Virus record (IMG/VR): IMGVR_UViG_3300022866_000322
Span: 1 to 64,000 of that record
DNA length: 64,000 nt
Reading direction: 5' to 3' (one strand)
Shown here: positions 4,197-61,909 of the stretch, one piece after another
Layout of the letters: each line of letters opens with the position of its first letter
Numbering within the stretch: the first letter of the stretch is position 1
Made by a program: the position numbers and the translations under genes
The notes under the pieces: model-generated
The model's input: the letters and a program-made list of their open reading frames with translations, nothing else
Told to the model about the DNA's origin: nothing
The model's database searches: none

Positions 4197-4628
4197 ATGT
4201 CAAAGATTTTATTTTTTCTATTGTTTATTCCCACATTGTTATTCTCAGCTGATCTTCATCAGATGAACGAAAATGATCTGGCACTAGATATTACGAACTC
4301 AGACACAGTACAAAATGGTCGAGAGTGGTACGACAGACGTTGTTCCTTCTGTCATGGTGGCCAAGGCAAAGGTGGCAAAGGTCCTTGCTTAACATGTGGC
4401 AAGTTTACATACAGTTCAAATACCAACATGGGTATATTCACAACCATTAGTGTGGGCATTACCAATCAGAGTTTAGGCGGCACAATGGGTGCATTTGGTA
4501 CAACCATTGACGGTATGGATATAGTTGCTATTGTAACTTACTTACGGTCAGAAGAAAGACGCAGAATTGAGTCTGGTGAAATTAAAGATCCATACATTGT
4601 GCAAGAACAGATGGTCTTCCCGGAATAA
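4197..4628 (+). CDS. Periplasmic c-type cytochrome, cytochrome cL (MxaG/XoxG)-like
   Basis: Signal peptide, CSFCH heme motif, GKGP.L..KFTYSSNTNMGIFTTI, GTMGAFG distal Met. Confidence 0.75.
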   Translation: MSKILFFLLFIPTLLFSADLHQMNENDLALDITNSDTVQNGREWYDRRCSFCHGGQGKGGKGPCLTCGKFTYSSNTNMGIFTTISVGITNQSLGGTMGAFGTTIDGMDIVAIVTYLRSEERRRIESGEIKDPYIVQEQMVFPE

Positions 4629-6004: not shown

Positions 6005-6223
6005 ATGTCCAAAATTGCAGGAAGGTCAGACAAAGCAATCGAAGTATGCGGCGGCGATCAGTATTTACTGATACTGATGGCATCACAAAGGACTCGCGAG
6101 ATTGCACAAGGTGCCGAGCCTAGAGTTACGGAAATCCAAGACGAAAAGGCAGCCAGTACTGCTATTAGAGAGATCGAACAAGGTTTGTATACAGTGGATG
6201 AATATAATCAAGATTCTAAATAA
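6005..6223 (+). CDS. rpoZ: RNA polymerase omega subunit homologue
   Basis: DQYLLILMASQRTREI...EP.V...EKAASTAIREIEQGL parallels omega NRFDLVLVAARRARQ...DKTTVIALREIEEGL. Confidence 0.8.
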   Translation: MSKIAGRSDKAIEVCGGDQYLLILMASQRTREIAQGAEPRVTEIQDEKAASTAIREIEQGLYTVDEYNQDSK

Positions 6224-7115: not shown

Positions 7116-7216
7116 CGGTCTGGTGCTCAATACAATTTAAGACCAGGAGAAGCTAGGGCAATCGAGAAGCACTTAAATACCTAGACTAAAAATTATTAAC
7201 CTTACTAAGTATTATT

Positions 7217-7528
7217 ATGCAGATATTATACAAAAAAGAACTAGAGCAATTGCTGGATAAAATTGCTACAGGAAAAACTGACGTTAACCGGCTCCAAGAG
7301 GACGAACTAGAGGAGTTGATGGACTACATTCACGAGCGAGCTGAGGAGTTGGATGATCCTGACTATGACGAGATTAAGCAGCAGTTACTCCAGTTGTTTG
7401 ACCTGCTCGGACATGTTATTGATAACAGGATTGAAGCGGAAGATAATGAAAAGTTTATAGACTCTATACGAGGAAGTATACAAAGAGGCAATTTTTACTT
7501 TGAATTGGGCAGTTTTATAGTGCATTAA
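7217..7528 (+). CDS. Hypothetical acidic protein
   Basis: ORF. Confidence 0.55.
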   Translation: MQILYKKELEQLLDKIATGKTDVNRLQEDELEELMDYIHERAEELDDPDYDEIKQQLLQLFDLLGHVIDNRIEAEDNEKFIDSIRGSIQRGNFYFELGSFIVH

Positions 7529-7634
7529 CTAAATATACCAAAATCAGTTAAACTGTCACATAACTACTCTCTTATTCCTTTAAATATCCTGTAGCCGCAA
7601 TTTAATCGCGGCTCATTAAATGGAGATATAAAAA

Positions 7635-7868
7635 ATGGAAATATTAGCCACAATCAAAACGTGGGCAGGTGAATTAGCTGAAGTAGTTGTTTCAGTCCTA
7701 GCATTAAGTATTGTTTTAGAACTATTAATGGGCAACTCAGCAATTCCGTTCTTGCCAACCCCAAGTGTTATCGGTAACGTGACAGATGTTGTTAACACAT
7801 TGGGTGGTCAAGGTCTAGTAGGCTTGTTAGCTGTTTGGGTCTTGTATACCGTTTGGAAAGCTAAGTAA
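7635..7868 (+). CDS. Small membrane protein
   Basis: Two hydrophobic segments; GGAG RBS. Confidence 0.7.
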   Translation: MEILATIKTWAGELAEVVVSVLALSIVLELLMGNSAIPFLPTPSVIGNVTDVVNTLGGQGLVGLLAVWVLYTVWKAK

Positions 7869-7895
7869 TCGCTTTTTAAATTTTTCAAGTTAATC

Positions 7896-7924
7896 AATAA
7901 ACCCGCTGGAGCGGGTTTATTTTT
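7896..7924 (+). terminator. Intrinsic terminator
   Basis: aataaacccgc-tgga-gcgggtttattttt. Confidence 0.75.
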
Positions 7925-7938
7925 GACTAAATATTAGT

Positions 7939-8286
7939 ATGAGAATAACAGACATTATACGCACTGTGCTAGACATAGTTGACCAAGCAGAACAGCCAGC
8001 ACAGGAACCTATGATTGCTATCGCTGTCAGTGAGCCAGACCAAGAGACCATGGACATGCAAACACTAGCTGGCATATTAAAAGTAGGCGATGATGGCGCA
8101 TGTGATGTCTGCGGACGTGATCCATGTGGTTGCGACAATGCAGGATATGCCAACGAGCCTAAGGAAATTATCGCTCCTATGCAAGCCGCATTTCCTTCAG
8201 GTGACGATGTACACAAGGCTAAGAACCCTGCAGACATTAGAACTGATGCAACCAGCATGTATCCAGATTACCAAGCAAGGAAATAA
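7939..8286 (+). CDS. Hypothetical late protein with CxxC-x3-CxC motif
   Basis: TAAATA-N5-ATG; CDVCGRDPCGC. Confidence 0.65.
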   Translation: MRITDIIRTVLDIVDQAEQPAQEPMIAIAVSEPDQETMDMQTLAGILKVGDDGACDVCGRDPCGCDNAGYANEPKEIIAPMQAAFPSGDDVHKAKNPADIRTDATSMYPDYQARK

Positions 8287-8289
8287 CAC

Positions 8290-8727
8290 ATGGCCAACAT
8301 TACCATCACAGTCAAAGGTCTCACAGGTAGACAAATACCTATAACACTAGACGACGGGTTACAGCTTGACGACGTCCCAGCACTGATCAGAGCACAGGAA
8401 GAAGAAAGTGCAAGTTTAACTGACGCCATGTACGGTGATATCTTTCTAAACACCAACCCACTCATAAACATTACCAACAATGGTACTGATACATTAGCAA
8501 CTCTTGGGTTTGGTACTGGTACGTTCTTGATATGCAAGGCCAAAGCAGACGGTACACTGGAAGCTCGCCAAATACAGAAACTAGAAATTGCATCAGCCAA
8601 ACGAGAATTCTTAGGTGACCCTGCTACATACGACAGAACTGAGTTACCTACAAGATATGTTGGCAACAACGTGGTCGACAATGCCAACTCAGGTGGATTG
8701 TTGTTAGGCCGACCTTGGGCAGAGTAA
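8290..8727 (+). CDS. Protein with N-terminal ubiquitin-like (beta-grasp) domain and C-terminal ...GGL..GRPW domain
   Basis: ITITVKGLTGRQIPITL...V.A.I...E aligns without gaps to ubiquitin 1-34; TLATLGF..GTFL echoes TLSDYNI..ESTL. Confidence 0.55.
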   Translation: MANITITVKGLTGRQIPITLDDGLQLDDVPALIRAQEEESASLTDAMYGDIFLNTNPLINITNNGTDTLATLGFGTGTFLICKAKADGTLEARQIQKLEIASAKREFLGDPATYDRTELPTRYVGNNVVDNANSGGLLLGRPWAE

Positions 8728-8730
8728 CCA

Positions 8731-9456
8731 ATGGCCAATATGGCAAATAGAAAGTACTTTGACTTTAGCGCCGCAATAGCACTTGACGATACTGGTGGCA
8801 ACTCAGTACAGAATATTTTTGGCTACCAGACAGCCGCAACCACAGCCTTTAGAGCACTATGGGGCAAAACCGCAACATACGTTTTTCCTCCTGCCGCACA
8901 ACAGATGCAGATCAAAAGCACCGAAAGCGCCGACACTATGCAGGTTCTACTTATCGGTCTTGATGCTAACTATGATGCCATCCAAGACACAGTTACACTG
9001 GCAGGCACAGCAGTGCAAACAACCACAGCAAGTTTTTTTAGAATCAACACCGCAATTATTCTTACAGGATCAAATGCAGGAACCATAGACATAGGTAACG
9101 ACCTTGGGGGCTCTGCTACATTCTACAAAACCATACTGCCAGGAAATGGCAGATGCCAAGAGAGTTTTTATACAGTACCGAGAAATCATTGTTTCTTGTT
9201 GTATCGCATCGACGCATTCAGTGCTGATAGTACTGCTGGTAAACCTGCTATCTTTAGAAATTATGTTAGCAATGCGGCAGGTAGAGTATTGAACGTAGCA
9301 CGAACTACTTTTGCTGACAACATGCACATCCAACGTCAGATGCCTTTCAAGTACGACGAGAAGTCTGATATACAGTTCCAAGCGGCCACCGCAAGCGGCT
9401 CACACGAAATCGCAGTGTTTGGCGAAGGTGTGTTGCATAACCTAACGCAGGTTTAA
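8731..9456 (+). CDS. Hypothetical, probably virion-associated beta-rich protein
   Basis: A/T/G-rich; in late operon. Confidence 0.55.
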   Translation: MANMANRKYFDFSAAIALDDTGGNSVQNIFGYQTAATTAFRALWGKTATYVFPPAAQQMQIKSTESADTMQVLLIGLDANYDAIQDTVTLAGTAVQTTTASFFRINTAIILTGSNAGTIDIGNDLGGSATFYKTILPGNGRCQESFYTVPRNHCFLLYRIDAFSADSTAGKPAIFRNYVSNAAGRVLNVARTTFADNMHIQRQMPFKYDEKSDIQFQAATASGSHEIAVFGEGVLHNLTQV

Positions 9457-9528
9457 TTGGCAAAAAATTCAGTTGACTAACTGCCCTGTTCCTTATATAA
9501 TTAGTCAACTACCCAATAAATATACACT

Positions 9529-10890
9529 ATGCTATTAGCCATACTTACATTCGTTACAGCAATATCCATTTCGTTCATTGCGGCTTGGTACAGTATTGCT
9601 GGCTTGATTGCAGTGTTCAGTGCCGCAGTCATGCCTGTGATTATCATGGGTGGCGCACTAGAAACTGGTAAGATTGTTGCTACAGTTTGGTTACACCAAA
9701 ATTGGCATCGTGCACCAAGACTGTTTAAATGGTACTTGATCCCGGCAATTACTGTGTTGATGTTTATCACCTCAATGGGTATTTTTGGCTTCCTGAGTAA
9801 AGCACACATTGAACAGACTTCACTAAGTGAAGAACAGGTAGCACAGATCAAATCGCTTGAGAGTAAAATGACTCGTTCGGAAGCCAAGATAGTTCGTTGG
9901 ACCGACGAGCTTACCCGGTTATCTAAAGGTGAAGATGTACGTGTGGACAACCTGGTTGATCGTGACAACGATGCACTAAAAGAAATCCGTGTGCAAGTTA
10001 ACAAAGAAAAAACCAATGCTCGTGCTGATGCAGAAAAGCAAATACAGTTACAGAATGATAGATTAGTACAAGCCGCAGAGCGCAAGTCAGCAGACATAGC
10101 CGCCGCACAAGAACGTAAGACAGCAAACATCGCCACAGCACAAGCCCGTAAGACAGCAGACATTGGCGCCGCCCAGGCTCGATATGAAAACTCCTTTAGT
10201 AAAAAAGGCCTAGATGAAGCAGTAGCCAATGCCAAGAAGATTGAGTTAGAAGCAACAGAGCAAGCCAAGAAGATTGAGTTAGAAGCAACACAGCAGGCCA
10301 AAGCAAATGAGCTTTCAGTTGCCAGTGCGGCACAGCGTGAGATCAAAAGTATCAACGCCAAGTTAACAGAAACACTTAGCAGTATTGATGCCAAGTACGG
10401 ATCAGAATTACAATCAGTTAATAATAGAATACAAAAACTACGTGACCAGTCAAACACTAAAACTGTAGATATTGACGGTAGGGTAGAAGAACTTGAGAAT
10501 TTTGTTGACAAAGAACAAACGGAGATTGATCAAATACGTGAAGAAGTTTTTGTGTTCGAAAAAGAATACAGGAAACTAGAAGCAGAAGTAGGACCAATAA
10601 AATACATTGCCGCATTTATATACGACCAAAGTCCAGATCAAAACCTACTGGAAAAAGCAGTACGCTGGGTCATAGTGTTGTTGGTTGTTGTGTTTGATCC
10701 ACTAGCACTTACACTTATACTTGCTAGTACCAAACAGTTTGAATGGGCTCGCAATAAAAAAACACACGGTGCTGACACTGTAATAGTTAAAGAAGTATAT
10801 GTAGAACAGAATCTAAAAACAGGCGCACCTGACGATATAGCAGAACTAGAGCGTAACGTAGACGACAAACTAAGGAAAAAGAATGGCTAA
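9529..10890 (+). CDS. Membrane-anchored long coiled-coil protein
   Basis: N-terminal TM helices, long helical middle, C-terminal VFDPLA TM. Confidence 0.75.
   Translation: MLLAILTFVTAISISFIAAWYSIAGLIAVFSAAVMPVIIMGGALETGKIVATVWLHQNWHRAPRLFKWYLIPAITVLMFITSMGIFGFLSKAHIEQTSLSEEQVAQIKSLESKMTRSEAKIVRWTDELTRLSKGEDVRVDNLVDRDNDALKEIRVQVNKEKTNARADAEKQIQLQNDRLVQAAERKSADIAAAQERKTANIATAQARKTADIGAAQARYENSFSKKGLDEAVANAKKIELEATEQAKKIELEATQQAKANELSVASAAQREIKSINAKLTETLSSIDAKYGSELQSVNNRIQKLRDQSNTKTVDIDGRVEELENFVDKEQTEIDQIREEVFVFEKEYRKLEAEVGPIKYIAAFIYDQSPDQNLLEKAVRWVIVLLVVVFDPLALTLILASTKQFEWARNKKTHGADTVIVKEVYVEQNLKTGAPDDIAELERNVDDKLRKKNG
10231..10296 (+). repeat. 33-bp in-frame tandem repeat (AKKIELEATEQ x2)
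   Basis: gccaagaagattgagttagaagcaaca at 10231 and 10264. Confidence 0.9.
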
Positions 10891-11068
10891 ACCACAACAG
10901 GAAATTGATGAAATTTGGGCAAAGTACAAGAATGCCCTATCACAACTCAACGAGGCTTTGGACGAGAATGAAGCACTGCAAAGTGAACTTGATCTTGACT
11001 TTACAATGCCAGCAGATATTGCTGAGCTTGAGGCAAAAGTTGAAGCACGACTAGGAACTAATGCCTAA
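10883..11068 (+). CDS. Hypothetical protein
   Basis: Overlapping ORF; P.DIAELE..V motif also ends the upstream protein. Confidence 0.6.
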   Translation: MAKPQQEIDEIWAKYKNALSQLNEALDENEALQSELDLDFTMPADIAELEAKVEARLGTNA

Positions 11069-11669
11069 CGACTACCAGGAGTCAGTAAACCAACTCTGGG
11101 ACAAATATAGATTAGCACTACAAAGACTTGATTGGGCACTTGATCAATTAGACAAGCAAAAGCCCAATCAAATCGTTGCGGAGCCAAAGCCCAGTCCAGC
11201 AGAAGTGTCAATAGACGATTTTGTTATAGGTGAAGAAGAAGCAACAGATCCTAATATCGCTATAAAGCGTGGCTTGGATGATGTAGTCAAGTATCAAAAA
11301 AAGAACTACAACATAGAAGCATTCAAAGCATTGCATCCATTACTTCCTATTTACAGTGTTAAGGTAAGAGCTGATAACGATACTGTGGTGAACACAGCCG
11401 AGTGTGGATTTGGAAACCAGTTTCCGATTAGGCCAAACAAAGGTGATATGTATATTAGGACAGATTTCTTACCAAATAAATTGTATAAATGGAACAATAA
11501 GAAGTGGATAGAGCTTGACAAATCAACGACAGACAGTTATACTTACAATGAGGCGTACATACAGCATTTGATTGATAAATTGCAGTCGGGAGAATATACC
11601 GCAGATGATTTAAGTGACGCCGAACTAGAACAAATACAACAGATAGTGGGGAAAGATGGATTACAGTAA
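11061..11669 (+). CDS. Hypothetical protein
   Basis: Overlapping ORF; FP..P.KGDMYIRTD..PNKLYKWN motif. Confidence 0.65.
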   Translation: MPNDYQESVNQLWDKYRLALQRLDWALDQLDKQKPNQIVAEPKPSPAEVSIDDFVIGEEEATDPNIAIKRGLDDVVKYQKKNYNIEAFKALHPLLPIYSVKVRADNDTVVNTAECGFGNQFPIRPNKGDMYIRTDFLPNKLYKWNNKKWIELDKSTTDSYTYNEAYIQHLIDKLQSGEYTADDLSDAELEQIQQIVGKDGLQ

Positions 11670-12015
11670 TTTTATAACACCACCAGATTTTGTAGAAGAC
11701 GATTTTCACACAGTAACAGTAGTTGATGCGTCTCCTAAGGATGTTGAACTATTAGGCCAAATAGCCAAAGGTACAAACAATGCATACAATGTATATTTGT
11801 ACCATCAGGGCATGGATGATACTGATTGGTTGGCTAAAGCAATTGAAAAAAGTGACGCCGTGATTGTTAATACCGCGGAACCTTACGACAACGAGGATCT
11901 TTGCAAAAACAGCAACGTTTATTACTACGGACCAAAGACTTACATTACTGATGCAACTAAAGTCGACACACCATTTGACTATTTTGCACAGCTCGAAAAA
12001 CAACAAACTAAATAA
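11656..12015 (+). CDS. Hypothetical protein
   Basis: Overlapping ORF. Confidence 0.6.
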   Translation: MDYSNFITPPDFVEDDFHTVTVVDASPKDVELLGQIAKGTNNAYNVYLYHQGMDDTDWLAKAIEKSDAVIVNTAEPYDNEDLCKNSNVYYYGPKTYITDATKVDTPFDYFAQLEKQQTK

Positions 12016-12021
12016 AAAACT

Positions 12022-12270
12022 ATGGCAACCAACTTTGAAAAAAAACCAGGCAGACCTTTTGGCAATAAGGTAATAGTCCAGTACGACAATGTAGAAAAAG
12101 CTATGCGTAAACTAAAGAAAAAAGTTAGCGAAAGCGGAGTACTACAAACTTTACGCTCAAAAGAATCTTTTGAAAAACCCACTACAAGACGCAAGCGGAA
12201 ACATGCCGCCGCAGTTCGCAGATGGAAAAAGCAACTACTAGAAGAGCAGTTGCCTAAAAAGATGTACTAA
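12022..12270 (+). CDS. rpsU: Ribosomal protein bS21
   Basis: NVEKAMRKLKKKV...G.L..LR..E.FEKPT.RRKRK..AA.RR. Confidence 0.92.
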   Translation: MATNFEKKPGRPFGNKVIVQYDNVEKAMRKLKKKVSESGVLQTLRSKESFEKPTTRRKRKHAAAVRRWKKQLLEEQLPKKMY

Positions 12271-12513: not shown

Positions 12514-12543
12514 CATCTAGTCTTGTATCCTGTATAAATATAC

Positions 12544-12612
12544 TTGTAGTGCCGATTATCGGGCTACAACATCACAAGTCATAACTTGCTTAACATAAAG
12601 GAGAAAACTATG
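12544..12612 (+). promoter_or_regulatory. ROSE-like RNA thermometer leader of the sHSP gene
   Basis: 5' hairpin ttgtag..ccga-tta-tcgg.ctacaa; CTTGCTT (12585-12591) pairs with AAGGAG with bulged G. Confidence 0.55.
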
Positions 12613-13068
12613 ACATCATACAAACTTAGTACGACCAACCTTCCCGGATTTACTGCTTCACTTAATCGTCATGCCATCGGCTTTGACAACTTGTTTAATG
12701 AACTGACCCGAACACACTTGGGCAATTCAAAAGCAGATAATTATCCTCCATACAACATCATCAAAATTGACGAACACAACTGGGCGATCCAGGTTGCAGT
12801 TGCAGGGTTTGGTGAAGATGAGTTGAACATTGAATTCAAAAGCAATGTGTTGACTATCACCGGGGAGAAGCAGGAAGCAGAAGCAGAAGAACACGAATAC
12901 CTGCACAAAGGTATTAGTGCTCGCACATTCACTCGCACATTTACTCTCAACGAGAATGTTGAGATCAAAGGTGCAACAGTAGTAAATGGCATCCTGGCAG
13001 TCAGCTTAGAGCATGTTGTTCCGGACGAACAAAAGCCTAAAAAGATTGCAATTACCTTTACTAAGTAA
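12610..13068 (+). CDS. Small heat shock protein Hsp20/IbpA
   Basis: AIGFD, NYPPYNI, VAVAGF, YLHKGISARTF.RTF.L, NGILAVSL; start 12610 after AAGGAG. Confidence 0.95.
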   Translation: MTSYKLSTTNLPGFTASLNRHAIGFDNLFNELTRTHLGNSKADNYPPYNIIKIDEHNWAIQVAVAGFGEDELNIEFKSNVLTITGEKQEAEAEEHEYLHKGISARTFTRTFTLNENVEIKGATVVNGILAVSLEHVVPDEQKPKKIAITFTK

Positions 13069-13141: not shown

Positions 13142-13447
13142 ATGAGTGAAAAAACTGAAGTAAAACAATCTACAAAATCTAAAACAAGTATCAAACCACC
13201 TAATCTTTACAATGTAATCTACCTCAATGACAATAAGACCACAGTAGAGTTTGTTGTAGAGAGTCTGAAAGTAATTTTCCATCATAGTGAAGAAATAGCA
13301 AAAGAATTAACTGTTAAGATTCATAACGACGGTAGTAGCGTAGTAAAAACACTTACATATGAAGTTGCTGAGCAAAAAGGTGTAGAAGTAACAATGCTTG
13401 CTCGTAACAACGGATTCCCCCTCGAAGTTAAACTACAGCCAGCATAA
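13142..13447 (+). CDS. clpS: N-degron adaptor ClpS
   Basis: PNLYNVIYLNDNKTTVEFVVE.L...F, IH..G, E.AEQK, FPL. Confidence 0.93.
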   Translation: MSEKTEVKQSTKSKTSIKPPNLYNVIYLNDNKTTVEFVVESLKVIFHHSEEIAKELTVKIHNDGSSVVKTLTYEVAEQKGVEVTMLARNNGFPLEVKLQPA

Positions 13448-15023: not shown

Positions 15024-15353
15024 ATGGACATTGATGTAGCCGGCGCAATAAACCAATATGGTTTTCCGATTATAGCCGCGTGTGGGTTAGGGTACTTTGT
15101 ATATTACATATGGACCTGGGCAACAAAAGAAATTGATCCTGTACTAAGCGAAGCACAAATGACGCTGATTGCGTTGATTGACAGAATTCGTATGCTTGAT
15201 AACGATTTAATTAGACTGAACCAAAAGTTAAACATGATTCTTGAACTAGATGCAAAAGCTAGAGCAAATTTACAAAAAGCACAAGAATTAGAACTAAAAC
15301 TAAAACAGGTCAAGGACCAAGGAGCTAAAACAAAAAATGAATCATCAAAGTAG
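15024..15353 (+). CDS. Small single-TM protein with GFPI motif and coiled coil
   Basis: QYGFPIIAACGLGYFVY; shared L.DR....D.D.IRL. Confidence 0.7.
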   Translation: MDIDVAGAINQYGFPIIAACGLGYFVYYIWTWATKEIDPVLSEAQMTLIALIDRIRMLDNDLIRLNQKLNMILELDAKARANLQKAQELELKLKQVKDQGAKTKNESSK

Positions 15354-15879
15354 TTATGAAAAGGCAGCCTGGCAGAAGTTTAAAAAGTCCAACCCAGTAA
15401 CCTATACTATATCAACAGTGTTGAGTTTTGGCTTTTGGAGTTTTATTATGGGATTCCTTGTGGGCATGTTTTTTATCAGTGCGGCAACAGCAGGCGACTT
15501 AACTTATAAGTTTAATAACCCTAGTTTTAACGGTATAGGCTACAGTAGTCATGTGTTGACCATTGAAAACCTAACACACACTAGAAGAGCAGAAATCAAA
15601 TCTAAGTTAGAGTCCGCGGCAAGAGAAATTGAGCGTGAAAAAGAAAACTCTAATGTTAATAAGTTCTTGGCTAATTTAGAAAGTAGAATCTATGCTGAAC
15701 TTAGTAAGCAAATTTCAGACAAACTGTTTGGGGAAAATCCACAAAGTAGTGGTACTATTGATCTACTAGGCAATACAGTGGCTTATGAAATGACCGACGA
15801 CCTAGTAACATTAAACGTAACGCAAACAGATGGATCAGTTACGAAGGTTGAAATTCCTGTTGCCAGTTTTGCCTTTTAA
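15337..15879 (+). CDS. csgF: Curli assembly protein CsgF-like
   Basis: LTYKFNNPSFNG N-terminal motif; F..NLESRIYA.LS; immediately before csgG. Confidence 0.8.
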   Translation: MNHQSSYEKAAWQKFKKSNPVTYTISTVLSFGFWSFIMGFLVGMFFISAATAGDLTYKFNNPSFNGIGYSSHVLTIENLTHTRRAEIKSKLESAAREIEREKENSNVNKFLANLESRIYAELSKQISDKLFGENPQSSGTIDLLGNTVAYEMTDDLVTLNVTQTDGSVTKVEIPVASFAF

Positions 15880-15888
15880 AGGAGATGC

Positions 15889-16707
15889 ATGCTAGGTAGA
15901 ATATGTGTGGCGTTATTGGTTTTTTTGTTAGTTGGTTGCGCCTCGACTAATCCAAAACTTGGCAGACCAGCTGAGCTTGCTGAAACCCCAGTCAAGAAAC
16001 ATTTAATTAATTTCCCTGCAATTAAAGGCGGACAGCCTGTGACAGTTGCAATATACAGTTTCCAAGATAAGACTGGACAACGTAAACCAGCAGATAACAT
16101 TGCCAACATCAGTACAGCAGTAACACAAGGTGCAGAAGTATACTTAATAGATGCACTAATGGCACTAGCAGATGGTGAGTTTTTTGATGTTGTAGAGCGC
16201 AATGGCCTGGACAACCTAATCAAAGAAAGACAGATTATACGTAATGCACGAAGTGAGTTTGATGAGAAACAGAAATTGGGTGCAATGAAGTTTGCTGGTA
16301 TTATAATCGAAGGCGGCATTATTGGTTATGATACAAACAAATTTACAGGTGGTATTGGCGCCAGGGTTATGGGCATTGGTGCACAACAAGAATGGCGTGT
16401 AGATGTAGTCACAATAGGGCTTAGAGCGGTAAGTGTACTGTCGGGAGAAGTATTGCTAAATGTGAGCACCGAAAAGACGATTTTAAGCACTAGTCTTGGC
16501 ATAAACGTGTTTAAATTCTACGATCAAGGCACACAAGTTCTAGAGGTAGAGTCAGGTACCAGTACCAATGAACCAGTTAATTATGCAGTAAAACAGGCAG
16601 TTGAACAAGCAGTAATTGAGTTAACCAAAGAAGGAAAACGTAAAAAACTATGGGATTACACTATGCTAGATGATAAATCAACAGGATGGAGTAATTACGT
16701 AGACTAG
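15889..16707 (+). CDS. csgG: Curli secretion channel CsgG/HfaB-family lipoprotein
   Basis: Lipobox LVGC; VAIYSFQDKTGQRKP, STAVTQGA, VVER.GL.NL.KERQIIR, EGGIIGYD. Confidence 0.93.
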   Translation: MLGRICVALLVFLLVGCASTNPKLGRPAELAETPVKKHLINFPAIKGGQPVTVAIYSFQDKTGQRKPADNIANISTAVTQGAEVYLIDALMALADGEFFDVVERNGLDNLIKERQIIRNARSEFDEKQKLGAMKFAGIIIEGGIIGYDTNKFTGGIGARVMGIGAQQEWRVDVVTIGLRAVSVLSGEVLLNVSTEKTILSTSLGINVFKFYDQGTQVLEVESGTSTNEPVNYAVKQAVEQAVIELTKEGKRKKLWDYTMLDDKSTGWSNYVD

Positions 16708-22945: not shown

Positions 22946-24181
22946 ATGCAAATAGGTTTTATAGGGTTAGGTAAATTAGGGCTTCCATGTGCTGAAGCAA
23001 TGGCCACACAGTATTCTGTGACTGGCTACGATATTTACAACAAAACAAGTGACACCATAAAAATATCACCCTCACTGGAAGGTGCAGTTAAAGGCAAAGA
23101 CATTGTATTCGTAGCAGTGCAAACTCCACACGATCCTGTGTACGACGGAAGTCGACCTATTACACATTTAGCAAACAAAGACTTTGACTATACTATAGTT
23201 AAACAAGTTTTAACAGACATAAACCAACATGTTGGACAGGAAACACTAGTAGTGCTAATCAGCACAGTATTACCCGGCACTACAAGGACACAGTTGCGTG
23301 ATTGTGTGTCAGAAGCACGTTTTGTTTACAACCCCTACCTTATTGCTATGGGTAGCGTTGCATGGGATATGGTTAATCCTGAAATGGTTATTATTGGTAC
23401 AGAAGATGGATCAGAAACAGGTGACGCAAAAGAACTTATTAACTTTTATAAGCCGTTAATGGAAAATGATCCCAAGTATAATGTTGGCACATGGGATGAA
23501 GCAGAAAGCATAAAGATATTTTACAACACATTCATCAGCACAAAAATTGGCCTGGTAAACATGATACAGGATGTTGCAGTGAAGAACGGTAACATTGATG
23601 TTGATGTGGTTACAGAAGCATTAGCAGGTAGCACACTGCGTATTGTAAGTCCCAAGTACATGAAAGCAGGCATGGGAGATGCAGGACCTTGCCACCCAAG
23701 AGACAACATTGCACTGCGTTGGTTAGCAGAAAGATTAGATCTCGGATACGATATATTTGACACTGTGATGCATGCTAGGGAAAAACAAGCAGAAAATGTT
23801 GCCAGTTACCTAACAGCACTGCAAAAGAAAAACAACATGCCGGTACGCATCATGGGCAAAGCATACAAGCCCGACGTTGATATACTGGATGGCAGTTATA
23901 GTTTGTTGATTGGGTATTACCTGGAAAAACAAGGTACAGACTTTGCTTATGTTGATCCGCTTACTAACGATATAGCAACCGATACCGACCAACCTGTTAT
24001 AGCATTCCTGGCGCACAACAGACAAGTCACATATGGATATACTGGAAATAAAAAGCGACAAGAATTCTATTGTGATGTTGCTACAGGAAGCATCATAGTT
24101 GATCCATGGAGAACATATCCGAAAATAGACAACAACTATAAAGTAATACATTATGGAAACACTAGATTTAAAACAGTTTAA
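22946..24181 (+). CDS. UDP-glucose/GDP-mannose dehydrogenase family
   Basis: GFIGLGKLG, AVQTP, STVLPGT, AESIKIFYN, GPCHPRD, AYKP. Confidence 0.92.
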   Translation: MQIGFIGLGKLGLPCAEAMATQYSVTGYDIYNKTSDTIKISPSLEGAVKGKDIVFVAVQTPHDPVYDGSRPITHLANKDFDYTIVKQVLTDINQHVGQETLVVLISTVLPGTTRTQLRDCVSEARFVYNPYLIAMGSVAWDMVNPEMVIIGTEDGSETGDAKELINFYKPLMENDPKYNVGTWDEAESIKIFYNTFISTKIGLVNMIQDVAVKNGNIDVDVVTEALAGSTLRIVSPKYMKAGMGDAGPCHPRDNIALRWLAERLDLGYDIFDTVMHAREKQAENVASYLTALQKKNNMPVRIMGKAYKPDVDILDGSYSLLIGYYLEKQGTDFAYVDPLTNDIATDTDQPVIAFLAHNRQVTYGYTGNKKRQEFYCDVATGSIIVDPWRTYPKIDNNYKVIHYGNTRFKTV

Positions 24182-26394: not shown

Positions 26395-27628
26395 TACACA
26401 AATAACTGATATAGTAGACGGAATAGTAAAACAAGTAGAAGCAGGTGTAGCAAAAAAAGTTGATCAGTTAATAGCTGATTCAATTAAAGCTCGCTTATCT
26501 ACCTTTAACTTTACTGATGCAATCCAAAAAGCGGCCACAGAAGCACTGGATAGAAAAGCCTCCGAGTATAATGTTGATAGCAAAAAACTTGAAACACGTA
26601 TTTTTGACCGGATCAACGAGACTATTACGGAAGTACAAAAACAAACAGATCAAACTGTTAAAGAAACAGTGGCTCAACGTATCCAAGAAATAGACTTTGG
26701 TAAAGCAGTAGTTAACGCAACTAGTATAGTAGTCAAAGATCAATTGAATGAAGTTATATTTCCTGATTCAAGTATTAAACCTGAATCGTTAGATTTGTCT
26801 ACATTTAAGTTTAGTGGAGACAACATACACGGTGGTATAATCACAGAATTCAGCAGTACTGGTATCGACGATCGTGCTACCAACATTGCAGTTACTATAT
26901 TAGATGATGTAACAGTTGTTGAAAACAATTTGCTTACAAAAGATTTAACTGTACAAGGTAACGTAACCATAAATGGAACACTGGACAAGGATTGTAGTTT
27001 TTATCAAGAACTGATTGATACTACATCAACCAACACTGTTAGTAAACTTAACAAAACCTTATTTGATGGATTTAGTAAAACTGTGTTTAATACAATTAAA
27101 GACAAAGGACTTGACCTAAACAAAATAACCATAAACGGCAAAGATGTTGTTATTGGTAATGCACTAGGATCCAACATAACCAATAGTAATTTACAAGAAC
27201 TGGGTATGCTCAAAGAATTGCAAGTGTCCGGCGAAGCATTTTTGAGTGGATCATTGTATACTGTTAAGGGTCGCGTAGGCGTTAACACGTTTGAACCAAG
27301 TGCGGCGTTAGCAGTATGGGACCAAGAAATTGAAATTACTACAGGTAAGAAGGAAACAGACATAGGACGCATAGGAACTCCTAGGAAACAGTCGTTGGTG
27401 CTTAGTGCAAACAACAAAAACAATATTGTGTTAAACACAGACGGAAGTACAAAAGTTGACGATTTACGCATAGGGCAAGCCATGCGATTTACAGAAGGCA
27501 ATCGAGCGCCAAACTATGCCAGTACAAAAGGACATGTAGTCTGGAACAACAACCCTAGTCTTGGCGGACCAATGGGATGGATCTGTTTAGGGTTAGCCAA
27601 CTGGGCAAACTTTGGCATAATTGACTAG
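26372..27628 (+). CDS. Hypothetical, possible fibre-like virion protein (start probably 26384)
   Basis: N-terminal helical region; beta-rich C-terminus ending GWIC...W..FG. Confidence 0.6.
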   Translation: MTVSMDLNTQITDIVDGIVKQVEAGVAKKVDQLIADSIKARLSTFNFTDAIQKAATEALDRKASEYNVDSKKLETRIFDRINETITEVQKQTDQTVKETVAQRIQEIDFGKAVVNATSIVVKDQLNEVIFPDSSIKPESLDLSTFKFSGDNIHGGIITEFSSTGIDDRATNIAVTILDDVTVVENNLLTKDLTVQGNVTINGTLDKDCSFYQELIDTTSTNTVSKLNKTLFDGFSKTVFNTIKDKGLDLNKITINGKDVVIGNALGSNITNSNLQELGMLKELQVSGEAFLSGSLYTVKGRVGVNTFEPSAALAVWDQEIEITTGKKETDIGRIGTPRKQSLVLSANNKNNIVLNTDGSTKVDDLRIGQAMRFTEGNRAPNYASTKGHVVWNNNPSLGGPMGWICLGLANWANFGIID

Positions 27629-28932
27629 TGGCCAATCAAAAAGTATTTTGCAGTGTACCTTGGAGCAATCATCACTTCTACTGGGATGGTTCCTACGGTG
27701 TATGTAGTAGCGAAAGTAAGCGGCCCAACAAAGGCGAAAGTTTAAACAACACAAGTTTAGTACAATGGTATGACAGCGATACTATGCAAGACTTTAGACG
27801 CAGAGTATTGTCGGATCAACCGTTAGAAGAATGCAGTGTATGTTATAAAGAAGAAGCACAAGGTTACCAAAGTCGTAGGATCAAAGAGAACTACAAACTG
27901 GGCATATTTACAGAACATACCAGTAATGCATTCCAACAAAGTTTTGAACAAAGTACATGGCGCGAAAAGTTTCATGCGGACGGAACTACTGATGTGTTAC
28001 CTATAGACTGGCATATAGACTTGGGAAACGAATGCAACTTTGCATGTAAGATGTGCATTCCAGAGGCTAGTAGTAAAATAGCAAGTGCATATAGATCCTG
28101 GGATATCGAGTACAATAAGAAACCGAACTGGGTTATAGATAAACAAAGTTGGGAACAGTTGCTAACTAACTTAGACACTGTTAAAGATCGCCTTAACAGA
28201 GTGCATGTCATTGGTGGCGAGCCTTTGATAAACAAAAGATTCCATCAACTTATAGACTGGTTACTGGAAAATAATTATCACCATATTAGTATAAGCACAG
28301 TGACCAACGGCACTAATGTAAATTTAGAGCTAGTAGAAAAACTTAAACAGTTTAGATTAGCACATTTAGAAATAAGCGCAGAAAGTATTAACCAAACAAA
28401 TGATTACATTCGTCAAGGTTGCGATTACGTTGGACTGTGGAAAACTATACACGAACTTGTTGAGTTGCAATCAGACAAGTTTCAGGTAGTACTTAGATCA
28501 GCGCCACAGTTGCTTAGTGTGAATGATTATTATCAGTATTTAGATAAAGCATATAGTCTAGGGCTTGCTGTTGATAGTGTGCCACTAACTTACCCTTCAT
28601 ACATGGCAGTGAATGTGCTACCTTGGGATATCAGACAACAACTAAAACCTAAGTATCAACAGCTACTAGATAAATTGCAAACAAATGTAGATCAAACAAG
28701 TTTCGAAACTTTAGCAGTAGGAAGGGATACATCTAGGCTTTCACAAAAGTTAGCCAGAGAATGCCGCGGAGTGATCACAATGTTAGATAGTGAAGCACCC
28801 CATAACGTAGAAGAACTAAGAGTAGAGCTGATTCAATGGCTACAGCGTTGGGACAAAAAATACAACTATAACGCTATTGCACTTTACCCACAGTACAAAG
28901 ATTTTTTGAAAAGTTATGGATACTCTGTATAA
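27628..28932 (+). CDS. Radical SAM enzyme with N-terminal twitch/SPASM-like cysteines
   Basis: FCSVPW, CSVC, CNFACKMC, GGEPL, TNGT. Confidence 0.9.
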   Translation: MANQKVFCSVPWSNHHFYWDGSYGVCSSESKRPNKGESLNNTSLVQWYDSDTMQDFRRRVLSDQPLEECSVCYKEEAQGYQSRRIKENYKLGIFTEHTSNAFQQSFEQSTWREKFHADGTTDVLPIDWHIDLGNECNFACKMCIPEASSKIASAYRSWDIEYNKKPNWVIDKQSWEQLLTNLDTVKDRLNRVHVIGGEPLINKRFHQLIDWLLENNYHHISISTVTNGTNVNLELVEKLKQFRLAHLEISAESINQTNDYIRQGCDYVGLWKTIHELVELQSDKFQVVLRSAPQLLSVNDYYQYLDKAYSLGLAVDSVPLTYPSYMAVNVLPWDIRQQLKPKYQQLLDKLQTNVDQTSFETLAVGRDTSRLSQKLARECRGVITMLDSEAPHNVEELRVELIQWLQRWDKKYNYNAIALYPQYKDFLKSYGYSV

Positions 28933-44000: not shown

Positions 44001-45206
44001 ATGAATAAAACTTTCTGTATCCTTCCTTGGACGCATTTCTTTCACGACGCTACCGGTAAAGTCTCGCCCTGTTGTAATGCTAATTGTAGCAGAACGGACG
44101 GCGATCAAACCTCTGATTACGGGAACATGCGAGATTATGATACTCACATGGACATAATGAATCAGGACAACTTTAATACGTTACGACTTAATATGTTGGA
44201 AGGTAAAGAGACTACTGAATGCCAGCCCTGTTACGACATAGAAAAGCATGGTGGAAAAAGTTTTAGACAAAGCAAGAACACAATGTTGGATCAAATGATC
44301 ACCATGGACGAGATTGAAGAAATGACCAATCCAGATGGTAGTCTCAAAGACTTTAACATGCGATATTGGGACATTAGGTTTAGCAACGTATGTAATCTAA
44401 GTTGTCGTATGTGTGGTCCAGAATACAGCCATACCTGGGCAAAAGAAGTTGATAAACGATTCAATGGTAAACACATAGTCAAAGCACACGAGTCAGAAGA
44501 ATGGTCCGACATGATCAGTAAGTATGGCCCATTGGATGAGTTATATGACATATACTTTGCTGGTGGTGAAGTTATGTTCCAGAAAGAACACTGGCAGATG
44601 CTGGATCACCTAATAGACATTGGTAAAACAGATGTTATGGTGATGTATGTTACCAATTTAACCAAGTTGGATTACGATGGATACAAGTTACTAGACTACG
44701 TACCCAAGTTCCGCGACGTGACATTTACTGTTAGTATGGACGGCACAGGCGACCTATTGGAGTATATTAGGTGGGGTAGCAAATGGGACCAGATAGTTAA
44801 GAATCTAGATACTGTTAACAATTTGCCTAACGTACACTTGCGAGTAAATCATGTTACCATGTGGTACAATGTTCTTGCATTACCTAAAACGTTAGACTTT
44901 TTGTATGGTAACGGTTATCTCAAAGAACCGTACCAATTGGATCTATGCATTGCACAAGAACCTGAGAATCATGTGGGTGCTCTACCTGAGGATCTCAAAT
45001 TAGTAGCAATAGACAAAATAAAGCATAGCACGTACTATGTCAATGGATTGTTAAAAGACAAACTAGATGCAATATGCAATGCAATGATGACTGTGGAATA
45101 TCCTTTACCAATCGAACATACCGAGACCTTAGACACACGTCGCGGTTGTAATATCGTAGACGTTCTGCCAGAGATTGAACCTTATTACTTAATTGGTGAA
45201 AATTAA
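44001..45206 (+). CDS. Radical SAM enzyme with N-terminal twitch/SPASM-like cysteines
   Basis: FCILPW, PCC, CQPC, CNLSCRMC, AGGE, TNLT. Confidence 0.92.
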   Translation: MNKTFCILPWTHFFHDATGKVSPCCNANCSRTDGDQTSDYGNMRDYDTHMDIMNQDNFNTLRLNMLEGKETTECQPCYDIEKHGGKSFRQSKNTMLDQMITMDEIEEMTNPDGSLKDFNMRYWDIRFSNVCNLSCRMCGPEYSHTWAKEVDKRFNGKHIVKAHESEEWSDMISKYGPLDELYDIYFAGGEVMFQKEHWQMLDHLIDIGKTDVMVMYVTNLTKLDYDGYKLLDYVPKFRDVTFTVSMDGTGDLLEYIRWGSKWDQIVKNLDTVNNLPNVHLRVNHVTMWYNVLALPKTLDFLYGNGYLKEPYQLDLCIAQEPENHVGALPEDLKLVAIDKIKHSTYYVNGLLKDKLDAICNAMMTVEYPLPIEHTETLDTRRGCNIVDVLPEIEPYYLIGEN

Positions 45207-60724: not shown

Positions 60725-61909
60725 ATGAAAAAAACAAATTTGCATTGCGCCCTGTCTCATATGAACATGGCCATCCAAAATGAGACCGACTACTGTAGTT
60801 GTAACGTCAACACAGAGAGTTGGAAAGACAATCAACATGATGTTATGAGAGTACCCACGTCTCCACCAAAAACAGCGTGGAACAGTTACACAAGGAAAAT
60901 GATTAAAATTGCATTAGACAAGGGAGTTAAGCACCCTGGATGCAGTCCCTGTTGGCAAGCTGAAGATGCTGGTCGTGTATCGGTCCGACAACAGTTTAAT
61001 TTGGCACTAGACGGAATACAACCTTTAGAGAATCAACCCAGATCCATTATATTAAAACCAGGAAACGTGTGTAACATGGCTTGCCGTATGTGCAACCCTG
61101 CTACTAGCACCAGGTGGTATCAAGATGCATACAAGTTAGAAGAACCTGATGTTGACTACAACGAGTACACAAAGAAATTTGAAATAATTAGAAACAGTTT
61201 CGGAAAACAAAACACTGAATTTTGGGATACTCTTAAAGAATGGATACCTGAGTTACGTGTGATTTACATTTATGGCGGGGAACCATTCATGAATCCGCAA
61301 ACCTGGGATTGGTTAGAGCATGGTATTAAAGTAGGCGCCGCTAAAGATATATACATTGGTTTAACGACCAACCTAATGATATGGAATGAAAAATACTTAG
61401 ATATTTTAAAACAATATAAAGCAGTTGATTTAAACGTAAGCCTAGACTCATCGGATGCAACAGAAATGGAATATGTTAGGCACTTAGCAGATGCAGATAC
61501 CTTGTTCAGAAATGGCAAAAAGGTAAATGATTATTTTGCAAGTTACGATAATGTGTCTCCATGTATAACGTATACACTAACATCATTGAACATGCACAAT
61601 ATAGATTATCATGCGCAACGACTAAAAGAATTGACTGGAATAGACAAGTTGATATTCAATAATGTGTATACTCCCGAGATCTACGACTTTAGACACTTAC
61701 CAAACCCAATCAAAGAAGAACTAAAAAGTGAAATTAAAGACCCAGAAGTAAACAGCATAATAAATCAAATTATCCCAGGGTGTGATAAACTGTGGCCTGA
61801 ATTTTGTGCGCATACAGACAAGTTAGATGCAATACGAGGGCAAAGTTTTCGGGAGGCTTTTCCGGAGTGGTGGGCTAAGTTAGAACCATATTGGTATAAC
61901 TATGAGTAA
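60725..61909 (+). CDS. Radical SAM enzyme with N-terminal twitch/SPASM-like cysteines
   Basis: HCAL, CSC, CSPC, CNMACRMC, GGEPF, TTN. Confidence 0.9.
   Translation: MKKTNLHCALSHMNMAIQNETDYCSCNVNTESWKDNQHDVMRVPTSPPKTAWNSYTRKMIKIALDKGVKHPGCSPCWQAEDAGRVSVRQQFNLALDGIQPLENQPRSIILKPGNVCNMACRMCNPATSTRWYQDAYKLEEPDVDYNEYTKKFEIIRNSFGKQNTEFWDTLKEWIPELRVIYIYGGEPFMNPQTWDWLEHGIKVGAAKDIYIGLTTNLMIWNEKYLDILKQYKAVDLNVSLDSSDATEMEYVRHLADADTLFRNGKKVNDYFASYDNVSPCITYTLTSLNMHNIDYHAQRLKELTGIDKLIFNNVYTPEIYDFRHLPNPIKEELKSEIKDPEVNSIINQIIPGCDKLWPEFCAHTDKLDAIRGQSFREAFPEWWAKLEPYWYNYE

What the first reader, a model, noticed from the sequence alone, without database searches (positions are those of the whole stretch)
8290..8727. 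Ubiquitin-like domain in a phage late protein
Seen: residues 4-37 align without gaps to ubiquitin 1-34 with 11 identities by my count (I, VK, LTG, I, V, A, I, E), and TLATLGFGTGTFL echoes TLSDYNIQKESTL. There is no terminal di-Gly; the domain is fused to a C-terminal LPTRY.GN.VVDN.NSGGL..GRPW module. Known: some bacterial anti-phage systems conjugate Ubl proteins to virion parts. Inference: a decoy or inhibitor of such systems, or a virion decoration domain.
Basis: partly seen in the sequence, partly recalled or inferred. Interest (0 to 1): 0.72.

Follow-up and report, generated by a model that had tools for sequence, protein, structure and literature searches.

The report
Ubiquitin-fold adaptor of a phage adhesin
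A 145-residue protein of an uncultured T4-like jumbo phage starts with a true ubiquitin-fold domain and ends with a previously undescribed, highly conserved 60-residue module that in hundreds of related phages is joined to sugar-binding adhesin domains; it is most likely a built-in virion adaptor, not a conjugatable ubiquitin or a proven anti-defence decoy.

Summary
ORF 8290-8727 (+) encodes 145 aa. Residues 6-39 match ubiquitin 3-36 at 11 of 34 positions without gaps, which 0 of 20,000 shuffles reach by score. A 71-sequence family profile hits single ubiquitin chains at E about 1e-5, and 21 of 71 members hit Pfam ubiquitin (best 3.5e-11). The AlphaFold model (pLDDT 90) superposes on ubiquitin, ISG15, SUMO and NEDD8 (Z 10-11). 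There is no C-terminal Gly-Gly.

The constant element is the C-terminal module (residues 88-145), not the Ubl. It occurs in at least 211 protein clusters and 349 viral-contig loci, with or without the Ubl, and also as a stand-alone 66-76 aa protein. It is usually single-copy in 350-400 kb phage genomes. Its fusion partners are mostly lectins or adhesins (Laminin_G_3, GLEYA/PA14, ILEI). The gene usually precedes a variable virion-protein cassette (phrog_1645 or phrog_8198) or TerL, and one phage fuses the module to the window's downstream gene family.

Best reading: the proximal adaptor of a modular virion adhesin, with the Ubl as an optional, non-conjugated accessory domain. Virion location is inferred, not shown. 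The decoy idea has no specific support. No E1 or JAB gene was found in the 221 kb fragment.

The parts
8290..8727 (+). Gene for the 145-aa Ubl + module protein (stop TAA at 8725-8727)
   Evidence: ORF list and sequence. 22 close to moderate homologues in metagenomes. 211 cluster representatives at E<=1e-3.
8290..8553 (+). Ubiquitin-family beta-grasp domain, residues 1-88
   Evidence: Permutation test. PF00240 hits in 21 of 71 family members. Profile against PDB ubiquitin at E about 1e-5. AF2 model pLDDT 89.9. Foldseek and VIA-align matches to ubiquitin, ISG15, SUMO and NEDD8.
8554..8724 (+). Conserved 'RQ..KL..A...R helix + YD..LPT.Y.GN.VVDN.N.GGL..GRPW' module, residues 89-145: the constant element of the family and the putative docking or adaptor domain
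   Evidence: Mean column identity 66% over 42 otherwise unrelated proteins. Found at the N-terminus, after the Ubl, at the C-terminus, split by an insert, or alone. No Pfam, PHROG or PDB sequence match. Modelled as helix 90-107 plus hairpin 121-130.
8731..9456 (+). Downstream gene, 241 aa, phrog_8198 family. It starts 3 nt after the stop, in the same frame, and occupies the variable cassette slot.
   Evidence: phrog_8198 at E 1e-18. Cyanomyovirus homologues are annotated hypothetical protein, virion structural protein, virion protein or tail fiber protein. It is fused to the module plus GLEYA/PA14 in L031. It is replaced by a phrog_1645 gene in the closest relatives L005-L007.
7939..8286 (+). 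Upstream 115-aa acidic protein, the most widely conserved neighbour of the module gene
   Evidence: Homologues lie next to the module gene in 34 loci. No family match.
9529..10890 (+). 453-aa protein with N- and C-terminal hydrophobic segments and a long central repeat or coiled-coil region; conserved neighbour
   Evidence: The N-terminal ~170 aa are conserved in 20 loci. In several loci it is fused to the homologue of 11061-11669.
11061..11669 (+). 202-aa protein whose C-terminal part matches a 'virion structural protein' PHROG; conserved neighbour
   Evidence: phrog_11591 at E 6e-8. Present in 22 loci.

Best explanation
The gene encodes the proximal 'adaptor' part of a modular virion-surface adhesin system that is typical of a large group of uncultured T4-like jumbo phages.

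The 60-residue C-terminal module is the functional core. It is a small autonomous docking domain that couples whatever is attached to it to a fixed partner, most likely a virion component.

In most relatives the attached part is a carbohydrate-binding domain on the same chain. In this phage nothing is fused. The variable partner (a phrog_8198 virion or tail-fibre-family protein) is encoded by the very next gene, 3 nt after the stop.

The N-terminal ubiquitin-family domain is an optional accessory to the module. It is a non-conjugated, integral Ubl that extends or stabilises the docking unit or adds a second protein-binding surface, as integral UBL and UBX domains do elsewhere.

Shown: the fold, the homology to ubiquitin, the architecture census, the copy number, the synteny and the one fusion.

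Inferred: that the module docks to the virion, that the product is in the particle, and what the Ubl binds.
For: Ubl identity.

Module as the constant element, among 171 retrieved proteins:
- 57 have the module at the N-terminus followed by other domains.
- 49 are Ubl + module + further domains.
- 38 are Ubl + module only.
- 17 have it internal or C-terminal.
- Three have the module split by an inserted domain.
- Stand-alone 66-76 aa module genes exist and form large, purely viral clusters.

Extra domains, among 97 longer members: Laminin_G_3 in 34, GLEYA in 22, PA14 in 20, ILEI in 9, plus Laminin_G_2, Calx-beta, DUF285 and the sialidase N-terminal lectin. The jumbo-phage review PMC7824862 associates Laminin G3 lectins with tail fibres and other virion components.

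Copy number: one copy in four of five complete or nearly complete (96-100%) 355-400 kb genomes, two adjacent copies in the fifth, and one in the window's 221 kb record.

Context:
- 36 of 81 loci have a phrog_1645 'virion structural protein' gene within 3.5 kb downstream, 18 have TerL, and 5 have phrog_8198, one of them fused.
- In G002 the order is module gene, phrog_1645, TerL, virion structural protein. In G004 TerL directly follows the module gene.
- phrog_8198 and phrog_1645 occupy one and the same slot between terS and terL in cyanomyoviruses S-M1 and WH25-B.

Rosetta-stone link: L031 has module + GLEYA/PA14 + phrog_8198 in one 457-aa protein.

Other points: the genome has a T4-type major capsid protein. 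The family is essentially confined to viral contigs, with 349 loci in IMG/VR against 2 MAG contigs in 185,579 species genomes.
Against: - No member comes from a cultured phage, so there are no virion proteomics. tblastn against 50,697 phage records finds nothing.
- In the window the gene lies among non-structural genes (RNR, RNAP omega, S21, Hsp20, ClpS) about 200 kb from the capsid gene in the record.
- 30 of 81 loci show none of the three marker genes downstream.
- A stand-alone module with nothing attached cannot itself be an adhesin, so the module may be an assembly factor rather than a permanent anchor.
- The predicted complex with the downstream protein gave no verdict.
- No structural relative of the module was found that would show how it docks.
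Confidence: 0.5

Rival explanations
1. Assembly chaperone of the lambda TAPI (gpI) type. A Ubl plus a small C-terminal domain, encoded next to fibre or host-specificity genes, helps fold or mount the neighbouring virion protein and may not stay in the particle.
For: - The architecture and gene position are parallel. TAPI is an N-terminal Ubl joined to a small globular C-terminal domain, flanked by the host-specificity gene J and sometimes fused to it (PMC1779556).
- Here the Ubl + module sits directly before variable virion-protein genes and is sometimes fused to them.
- Stand-alone 68-aa module genes fit a factor better than an anchor.
Against: - No sequence relationship to lambda gpI (hhalign probability 0.4%) and no Pfam tail-assembly hit.
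- No JAB peptidase was found in the 221 kb fragment. The NlpC/P60 domain of the TAPK partner was not searched.
- No conserved Gly at the end of the Ubl, which is a TAPI hallmark.
- The Ubl, the defining part of TAPI, is absent from about half of this family.
- Permanent fusion to lectin domains in about 100 clusters argues that the module stays with the adhesin.
Confidence: 0.2
2. Counter-defence. The phage Ubl acts as a decoy, competitive inhibitor or shield against host ubiquitin-like conjugation systems (Bil-type E1/E2/DUB), which attach a Ubl to the phage central tail fibre.
For: - Such systems exist and target a tail fibre (bioRxiv 10.1101/2023.09.04.556158).
- The domain is a true ubiquitin-family fold and superposes on a bacterial E1-E2-bound Ubl (8tyz_B, Z 10.1).
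- It sits in a protein family linked to fibre-type genes.
Against: - There is no free C-terminus and no conserved Gly, so it cannot be adenylated as a substrate.
- The Ubl is dispensable in half of the family and was gained or lost at least 5 times.
- Its similarity to the bacterial Ubl is no higher than to dozens of unrelated Ubls. At sequence level the PDB hits listed are ubiquitin and its variants or fusions, and no bacterial defence Ubl is among them.
- The genomic context is structural rather than a typical anti-defence islet.
Confidence: 0.06
3. Not a virion part: an intracellular adaptor used during infection. For example, a Ubl handle could deliver lectin-like or other domains to a host or phage machine (AAA+ or Clp-type), or it could be a cell-envelope-directed factor.
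For: - In the window the neighbours are host-takeover-type genes (ClpS, Hsp20, S21, RNAP omega, CsgF/CsgG).
- Integral Ubl domains commonly act as handles for AAA+ machines (general knowledge of UBX and UBL proteins).
Against: - No N-terminal signal-peptide-like segment was seen by eye in the sequences printed; no predictor was run.
- The lectin and adhesin domains make little sense inside the cell.
- Synteny with virion-protein cassettes and TerL in other genomes.
Confidence: 0.1

Closest known systems
Ubiquitin family (Pfam PF00240): integral, non-conjugated UBL domains
   Same: Beta-grasp fold with the ubiquitin strand order. There is significant profile similarity to ubiquitin itself over nearly the whole domain. 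As in integral UBL and UBX domains, the fold is built into a larger chain and not released.
   Different: It is encoded by a bacteriophage. There is no Gly-Gly, and no E1 or JAB gene was found in the genome fragment. It is followed by an undescribed 60-aa module. The window protein alone is below Pfam's threshold.
Lambda/T1 tail assembly protein I (TAPI, gpI)
   Same: A phage protein with an N-terminal Ubl and a small C-terminal domain, encoded beside the host-specificity or fibre gene and occasionally fused to it (PMC1779556).
   Different: - TAPI's Ubl is ThiS/MoaD-like with a conserved terminal Gly and a JAB/NlpC peptidase partner.
- Here the Ubl is ubiquitin-like and has no conserved Gly.
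- No JAB was found.
- There is no detectable homology to gpI.
- Here the Ubl is optional.
Modular phage decoration and fibre proteins with a conserved anchor and a variable binding part (T4 Hoc, T5 pb10, tail-fibre N-terminal attachment domains); named from general knowledge, not tested here
   Same: One conserved small attachment element with interchangeable distal lectin- or Ig-like binding domains. The gene lies in or beside a hypervariable cassette slot.
   Different: - No sequence or fold relationship was found.
- The module can sit at either end of the chain, can be split by an insert, and exists as a separate 68-aa protein.
- The attachment site is unknown.
Bacterial Bil-type Ubl conjugation defence
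   Same: A ubiquitin-like fold connected with phage tail-fibre biology. Structural superposition on a bacterial E1-E2-Ubl complex member.
   Different: Here the Ubl is phage-encoded, internal to a chain and lacks the C-terminal Gly. No E1 or JAB-type DUB gene was found; E2 families were not searched.

Membership tests
Ubiquitin-like beta-grasp superfamily / Pfam PF00240 | Beta-grasp fold (beta-beta-alpha-beta-beta-3/10-beta) superposable on ubiquitin | tested here: met
   AF2 model pLDDT 89.9. Foldseek against PDB gives target-normalised TM about 0.8 and rmsd 2.2-2.7 A. VIA-align Z 10-11.3 over residues 1-88.
Ubiquitin-like beta-grasp superfamily / Pfam PF00240 | Significant sequence or profile match to ubiquitin | tested here: met
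   Met at family level: 21 of 71 members hit PF00240 (best 3.5e-11), and the A2 profile hits single ubiquitin chains at E about 1e-5. The window protein alone has no PF00240 hit at E<=1, but its ungapped match beats 20,000 of 20,000 shuffles by score.
Conjugatable ubiquitin-like modifiers (Ub, SUMO, NEDD8, ISG15, bacterial Bil/Bub Ubls) | Exposed or processable C-terminal Gly(-Gly) at the end of the beta-grasp | tested here: not met
   The chain continues into the module. Gly at position 88 is in 26 of 71 members, and another clade has ISRLA-T there.
Conjugatable ubiquitin-like modifiers (Ub, SUMO, NEDD8, ISG15, bacterial Bil/Bub Ubls) | Cognate E1 (ThiF-type) and JAB-type peptidase encoded with it | tested here: inconclusive
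   No PF00899 or PF14464 match in the 221 kb record. But the record is only 63% complete, and E2 families were not searched.
Lambda tail assembly protein I (TAPI) | Sequence homology to gpI | tested here: not met
   hhalign of A2 against lambda gpI: probability 0.4%, 13 columns.
Lambda tail assembly protein I (TAPI) | Neighbouring JAB/NlpC peptidase (TAPK) and a conserved Gly at the Ubl end | tested here: not met
   No Prok-JAB in the fragment (the NlpC/P60 domain was not searched). No conserved Gly. The neighbours are unrelated small proteins.
Lambda tail assembly protein I (TAPI) | Ubl + small C-terminal domain next to, or fused to, a host-specificity or fibre gene | tested here: met
   Architecture. 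The downstream families are annotated virion structural or tail fiber protein in cyanophages. Fusion in L031. This is a resemblance in layout only.
Modular virion adhesin (decoration or fibre) with a conserved anchor | Conserved attachment element with interchangeable binding domains | tested here: met
   Census. Lectin and adhesin domains in the longer members. Module 66% mean column identity.
Modular virion adhesin (decoration or fibre) with a conserved anchor | Physical presence in the virion and a defined docking partner | not testable with these tools
   No cultured relative. The complex prediction with the downstream protein gave no verdict.

The most novel reading that the evidence does not exclude
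The ubiquitin-family domain at the base of a fibre- or adhesin-type protein is a built-in counter-measure against host ubiquitin-like conjugation defences that target tail fibres. A cis-Ubl would occupy, mimic or mislead the host E1/E2/DUB machinery. The 60-residue module would be a new, dockerin-like universal plug that lets these phages exchange adhesins on a fixed virion socket.
Probability: 0.08. Interest if true: 0.85.

Novelty: new variant of a known kind. Interest (0 to 1): 0.5.

Why it matters
- It puts a true ubiquitin-family domain, closer in sequence to ubiquitin than to ThiS/MoaD, into proteins of bacteriophages. This comes at a time when bacterial ubiquitin-like conjugation is emerging as an anti-phage defence that targets tail fibres.
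- It defines a large, unannotated, phage-specific family: at least 211 clusters at 50% identity and 349 loci on viral contigs. The core is a highly conserved 60-residue module with no Pfam, PHROG or PDB counterpart.
- That module marks the adhesin locus of a widespread group of aquatic T4-like jumbo phages. It could be used to find their receptor-binding proteins and to follow cassette exchange.
- If the module proves to be a plug-and-socket attachment element, it would also be a handy part for displaying domains on phage particles.

Tried and rejected
- The window protein alone has no useful Pfam or PHROG hit; the only hit is NAPRTase at E 0.02, below threshold.
- Megablast and tblastn against 50,697 phage records found nothing for the locus, the protein or a module-only protein.
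- The first AF2 run with 18 sequences was too poor to use (pLDDT 51). The 71-sequence run replaced it.
- The module profile against PDB sequences gave only insignificant portal-protein hits (E 1.2 and 3.4).
- ESM Atlas searches on the module gave only unnamed clusters (viral where a taxon is recorded). The Atlas model of a module-only protein is unusable (pLDDT 0.39).
- VIA-align over 48,161 chains listed only matches to the Ubl part.
- There is no paralogue of the module in the 221 kb record.
- The 108-aa protein that precedes the cassette in cyanophages looks unrelated to the module by eye; no alignment was run.
- Complex prediction of the Ubl-module protein with the downstream 241-aa protein gave no verdict (score 0.00), so it counts neither for nor against binding. 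I resent it with unaltered window and search-result sequences only.
- Stop-codon read-through joining the two in-frame genes is rejected. Relatives have double stops at the same junction (TAA TAA, TAG TAG), and TAA, TGA and TAG are all used as stops.
- An assembly artefact for the split gene is rejected. The 145-146 aa form recurs in many contigs, and the 7600-11700 stretch is held in at least 16 runs.
- No T4-type late-promoter motif lies directly upstream of the gene. The nearest are at 7173, 12008 and 12533, so 'late' remains unshown.

Full report
WHAT IS THERE

ORF 8290..8727 on the + strand encodes 145 residues. The window is the first 64 kb of a 221 kb IMG/VR viral record rated 63% complete. 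The record carries a T4-type major capsid protein (Pfam Gp23, E 1e-98). The phage is therefore an uncultured T4-like jumbo phage of probably about 350 kb. The same stretch is held almost completely by at least 16 salt-lake metagenome runs and partly by marine metatranscriptomes.

THE UBIQUITIN-LIKE DOMAIN IS REAL

Only 11 of 20,000 shuffles reach that number of identities at any offset, and none reach the score.
- The single protein is below Pfam's reach, but the family is not. Of 71 aligned members, 21 hit PF00240 individually (best E 3.5e-11), and others hit Rad60-SLD and OTU1_UBXL.
- The 71-sequence profile finds single ubiquitin chains in the PDB at E 1e-5 to 3e-5 over profile positions 5-77, that is ubiquitin 2-69.
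- AlphaFold with 18 sequences was poor (pLDDT 51). With 71 sequences the model is confident (pLDDT 89.9, pTM 0.78) and shows the beta-grasp order of elements in residues 3-84.
- Foldseek and VIA-align match residues 1-88 to ubiquitin, ISG15, SUMO, NEDD8, YukD, kindlin F0 and a bacterial E1-E2-bound Ubl. Z is 10-11 and rmsd about 2 A.
- The stated refutation (fold is not beta-grasp) therefore fails.

IT IS NOT A CONJUGATABLE UBIQUITIN

- The chain runs straight on into a helix.
- The linker has Gly at position 88 in only 26 of 71 members, and another clade reads ISRLA-T there.
- No ThiF-type E1 and no Prok-JAB gene were found in the 221 kb fragment. The record is incomplete and E2 families were not searched.

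THE CONSTANT PART OF THE FAMILY IS THE C-TERMINAL MODULE

An exhaustive HMMER search found 211 cluster representatives. Many match only residues 88-144.

Census of the 171 retrieved proteins:
- 57 have the module at their N-terminus followed by other domains.
- 49 are Ubl + module + other domains.
- 38 are Ubl + module only, as in the window.
- 17 carry it internally or at the C-terminus.
- In three proteins the helix and the hairpin half are separated by an inserted domain.

Other properties of the module:
- Stand-alone module genes of 66-76 aa are common on viral contigs and form large viral clusters in the ESM Atlas.
- It is very conserved, with 66% mean column identity over 42 otherwise unrelated proteins. 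The consensus is a helix RQ..KL..A...R followed by YD..LPT.Y.GN.VVDN.N.GGL..GRPW.
- It has no Pfam, PHROG or PDB-sequence counterpart.
- On a tree of the module, Ubl presence is clustered (21 changes against about 52 for shuffled labels). Well-supported branches still force at least five gains or losses. The alignment is short and the tree poorly resolved.

WHAT THE MODULE IS ATTACHED TO

Among 97 longer members, the Pfam hits are Laminin_G_3 (34), GLEYA (22), PA14 (20) and ILEI (9). There are single cases of Laminin_G_2, Calx-beta, DUF285, the sialidase N-terminal lectin and others. PHROG hits are to 'virion structural protein' and 'tail protein' families. These are carbohydrate-binding or adhesin folds. 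A comparative review of jumbo phages associates Laminin G3 lectins with tail fibres and other virion components (PMC7824862). That review does not mention any ubiquitin-family domain in phage proteins.

COPY NUMBER AND CONTEXT

- Four of five complete or nearly complete (96-100%) 355-400 kb genomes have one module gene. The fifth has two, side by side. The window's record has one.
- IMG/VR holds 349 loci. Among 185,579 species genomes only two MAG contigs carry it.
- Around the window gene, the 115-aa upstream protein recurs in 34 loci. The 453-aa membrane/coiled-coil protein recurs in 20 loci, the 202-aa protein in 22 and the 119-aa protein in 16.
- The gene immediately downstream is variable. 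It is phrog_8198 in the window and in L002-L004. In L005-L007 it is a 472-aa phrog_1645 'virion structural protein', although those flanks are almost identical to the window's.
- Of 81 distinct loci, 36 have a phrog_1645 gene within 3.5 kb downstream, 18 have TerL, and 5 have phrog_8198.
- In G002 the order is module gene, phrog_1645, TerL, virion structural protein. In G004 TerL directly follows the module gene.
- Both cassette families have homologues in T4-like cyanomyoviruses, annotated virion structural protein or tail fiber protein.
- In S-M1 and WH25-B the two families occupy exactly the same slot: after the neck genes, gp15, terS, a YadA-like structural protein, a ~590-aa protein and a 108-aa protein.
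- In L031 one 457-aa protein reads module, GLEYA/PA14, phrog_8198 domain. This is a Rosetta-stone link between the two adjacent window genes.

THE JUNCTION

- In the window the stop TAA is followed by one codon and then the ATG of the next gene, in the same frame.
- The same 'stop + NNN + ATG' spacing recurs in a dozen distinct loci with different downstream genes.
- Read-through is unlikely, because some relatives have two stops in a row.
- I read this as tight translational coupling, and as a sign that fused and split forms interconvert easily.
- Metatranscriptome contigs cover 8610-8754 (no mismatch, across the junction) and 8725-9517. This is compatible with transcription but does not prove it.

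INTERPRETATION

The best-supported model has three parts:
- The module is a small autonomous docking element of a modular virion adhesin (fibre or decoration).
- The lectin domains are the distal binding parts.
- The Ubl is an optional integral accessory domain at the proximal end.

In this phage the adaptor is made as a separate 145-aa protein, and the variable partner is encoded next to it. Head or tail attachment cannot be decided.

Rival models:
- A TAPI-like assembly factor. It has the same layout as lambda gpI (PMC1779556). But there is no homology, no JAB and no terminal Gly.
- A decoy against Bil-type Ubl conjugation. Nothing specific speaks for it.
- A non-virion intracellular adaptor.

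The predicted complex of the two window proteins gave no verdict and is not used as evidence.

NOVELTY

I found no description of a ubiquitin-family domain in phage structural-locus proteins other than TAPI. I found no annotation of the module in any library. Integral Ubl domains and anchor-plus-lectin phage adhesins are both known kinds. Their combination and the module itself are new. I rate it a new variant of a known kind, of moderate interest.

Noticed in passing
window 15337-15879 and 15889-16707 (+): Adjacent CsgF (E 2e-18) and CsgG (E 7e-51) homologues, the outer-membrane curli secretion channel pair, encoded by a phage. Close relatives have the same pair (L007).
   Followed up: partly
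window 6005-6223, 12022-12270, 12586-13068, 13142-13447 (+): RNA polymerase omega (Rpb6 family), ribosomal protein S21, an Hsp20 small heat-shock protein and the Clp adaptor ClpS lie within 8 kb of each other. This is a host-takeover gene set around the Ubl locus.
   Followed up: partly
window 4197-4628 (+); 27628-28932, 44001-45206, 60725-61909 (+): A c-type cytochrome gene and at least three radical-SAM enzyme genes, together with a UDP-glucose dehydrogenase (22946-24181). This is an unusual metabolic load for a phage.
   Followed up: no
window 8731-9456 versus L005:8445-9860; L094:5977-6720 versus L095:5890-7170: phrog_8198 and phrog_1645 proteins replace each other at one and the same slot. 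This happens both in this jumbo-phage group and in the T4-like cyanophages S-M1 and WH25-B. It is a cassette exchange shared across distant phage groups.
   Followed up: partly
L005:8445-9860, L008:6178-7797, L014, L058, L064, L074, L075 and others: The phrog_1645 proteins that follow the module gene carry a conserved N-terminal extension (consensus NSTNY.HP.E.NL..LH.AM.Y). The cyanophage homologue printed (WH25-B) lacks it, and the cyanophage matches listed start at query residue 59. 20 of 81 module loci have it within 3.5 kb. It is a candidate partner of the module.
   Followed up: partly
window 8725-8733 and the same junction in L005, L008, L014, L024, L047, L052, L058, L064, L075, L079, L080: The spacing 'stop, one codon, ATG' puts the next gene in the same frame as the module gene, whatever that next gene is. 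By hand count, 17 of 30 distinct short junctions are in frame. Some have double stops, so read-through is unlikely.
   Followed up: partly
P0141, P0158, P0170: The module is split. Its helix is at the N-terminus, and the YD..LPT..GRPW half follows a roughly 90-230-aa insert, at or near the C-terminus. That implies the two halves meet in space around the inserted domain.
   Followed up: no
window 7173, 12008, 12533: Motifs like the T4 late promoter lie upstream of gene starts: TATAAATA at 12533 before hsp20, CTAAATAA at 12008 before S21, and TTAAATAC at 7173 before the ORF at 7217. Similar '.TAAATA.' words lie just upstream of TerL and other genes in related loci.
   Followed up: no
L098 (MAG Crocinitomicaceae) and L099 (MAG Fischerella): These are the only two module hits among 185,579 species genomes, and both are MAG contigs. 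They may be mis-binned phage contigs, or weak hints at Bacteroidota or cyanobacterial hosts.
   Followed up: no
window 7600-11700: The stretch is held at 94-98% of sampled words by at least 16 salt-lake metagenome runs, and partly by marine metatranscriptomes at 90-100% identity.
   Followed up: partly
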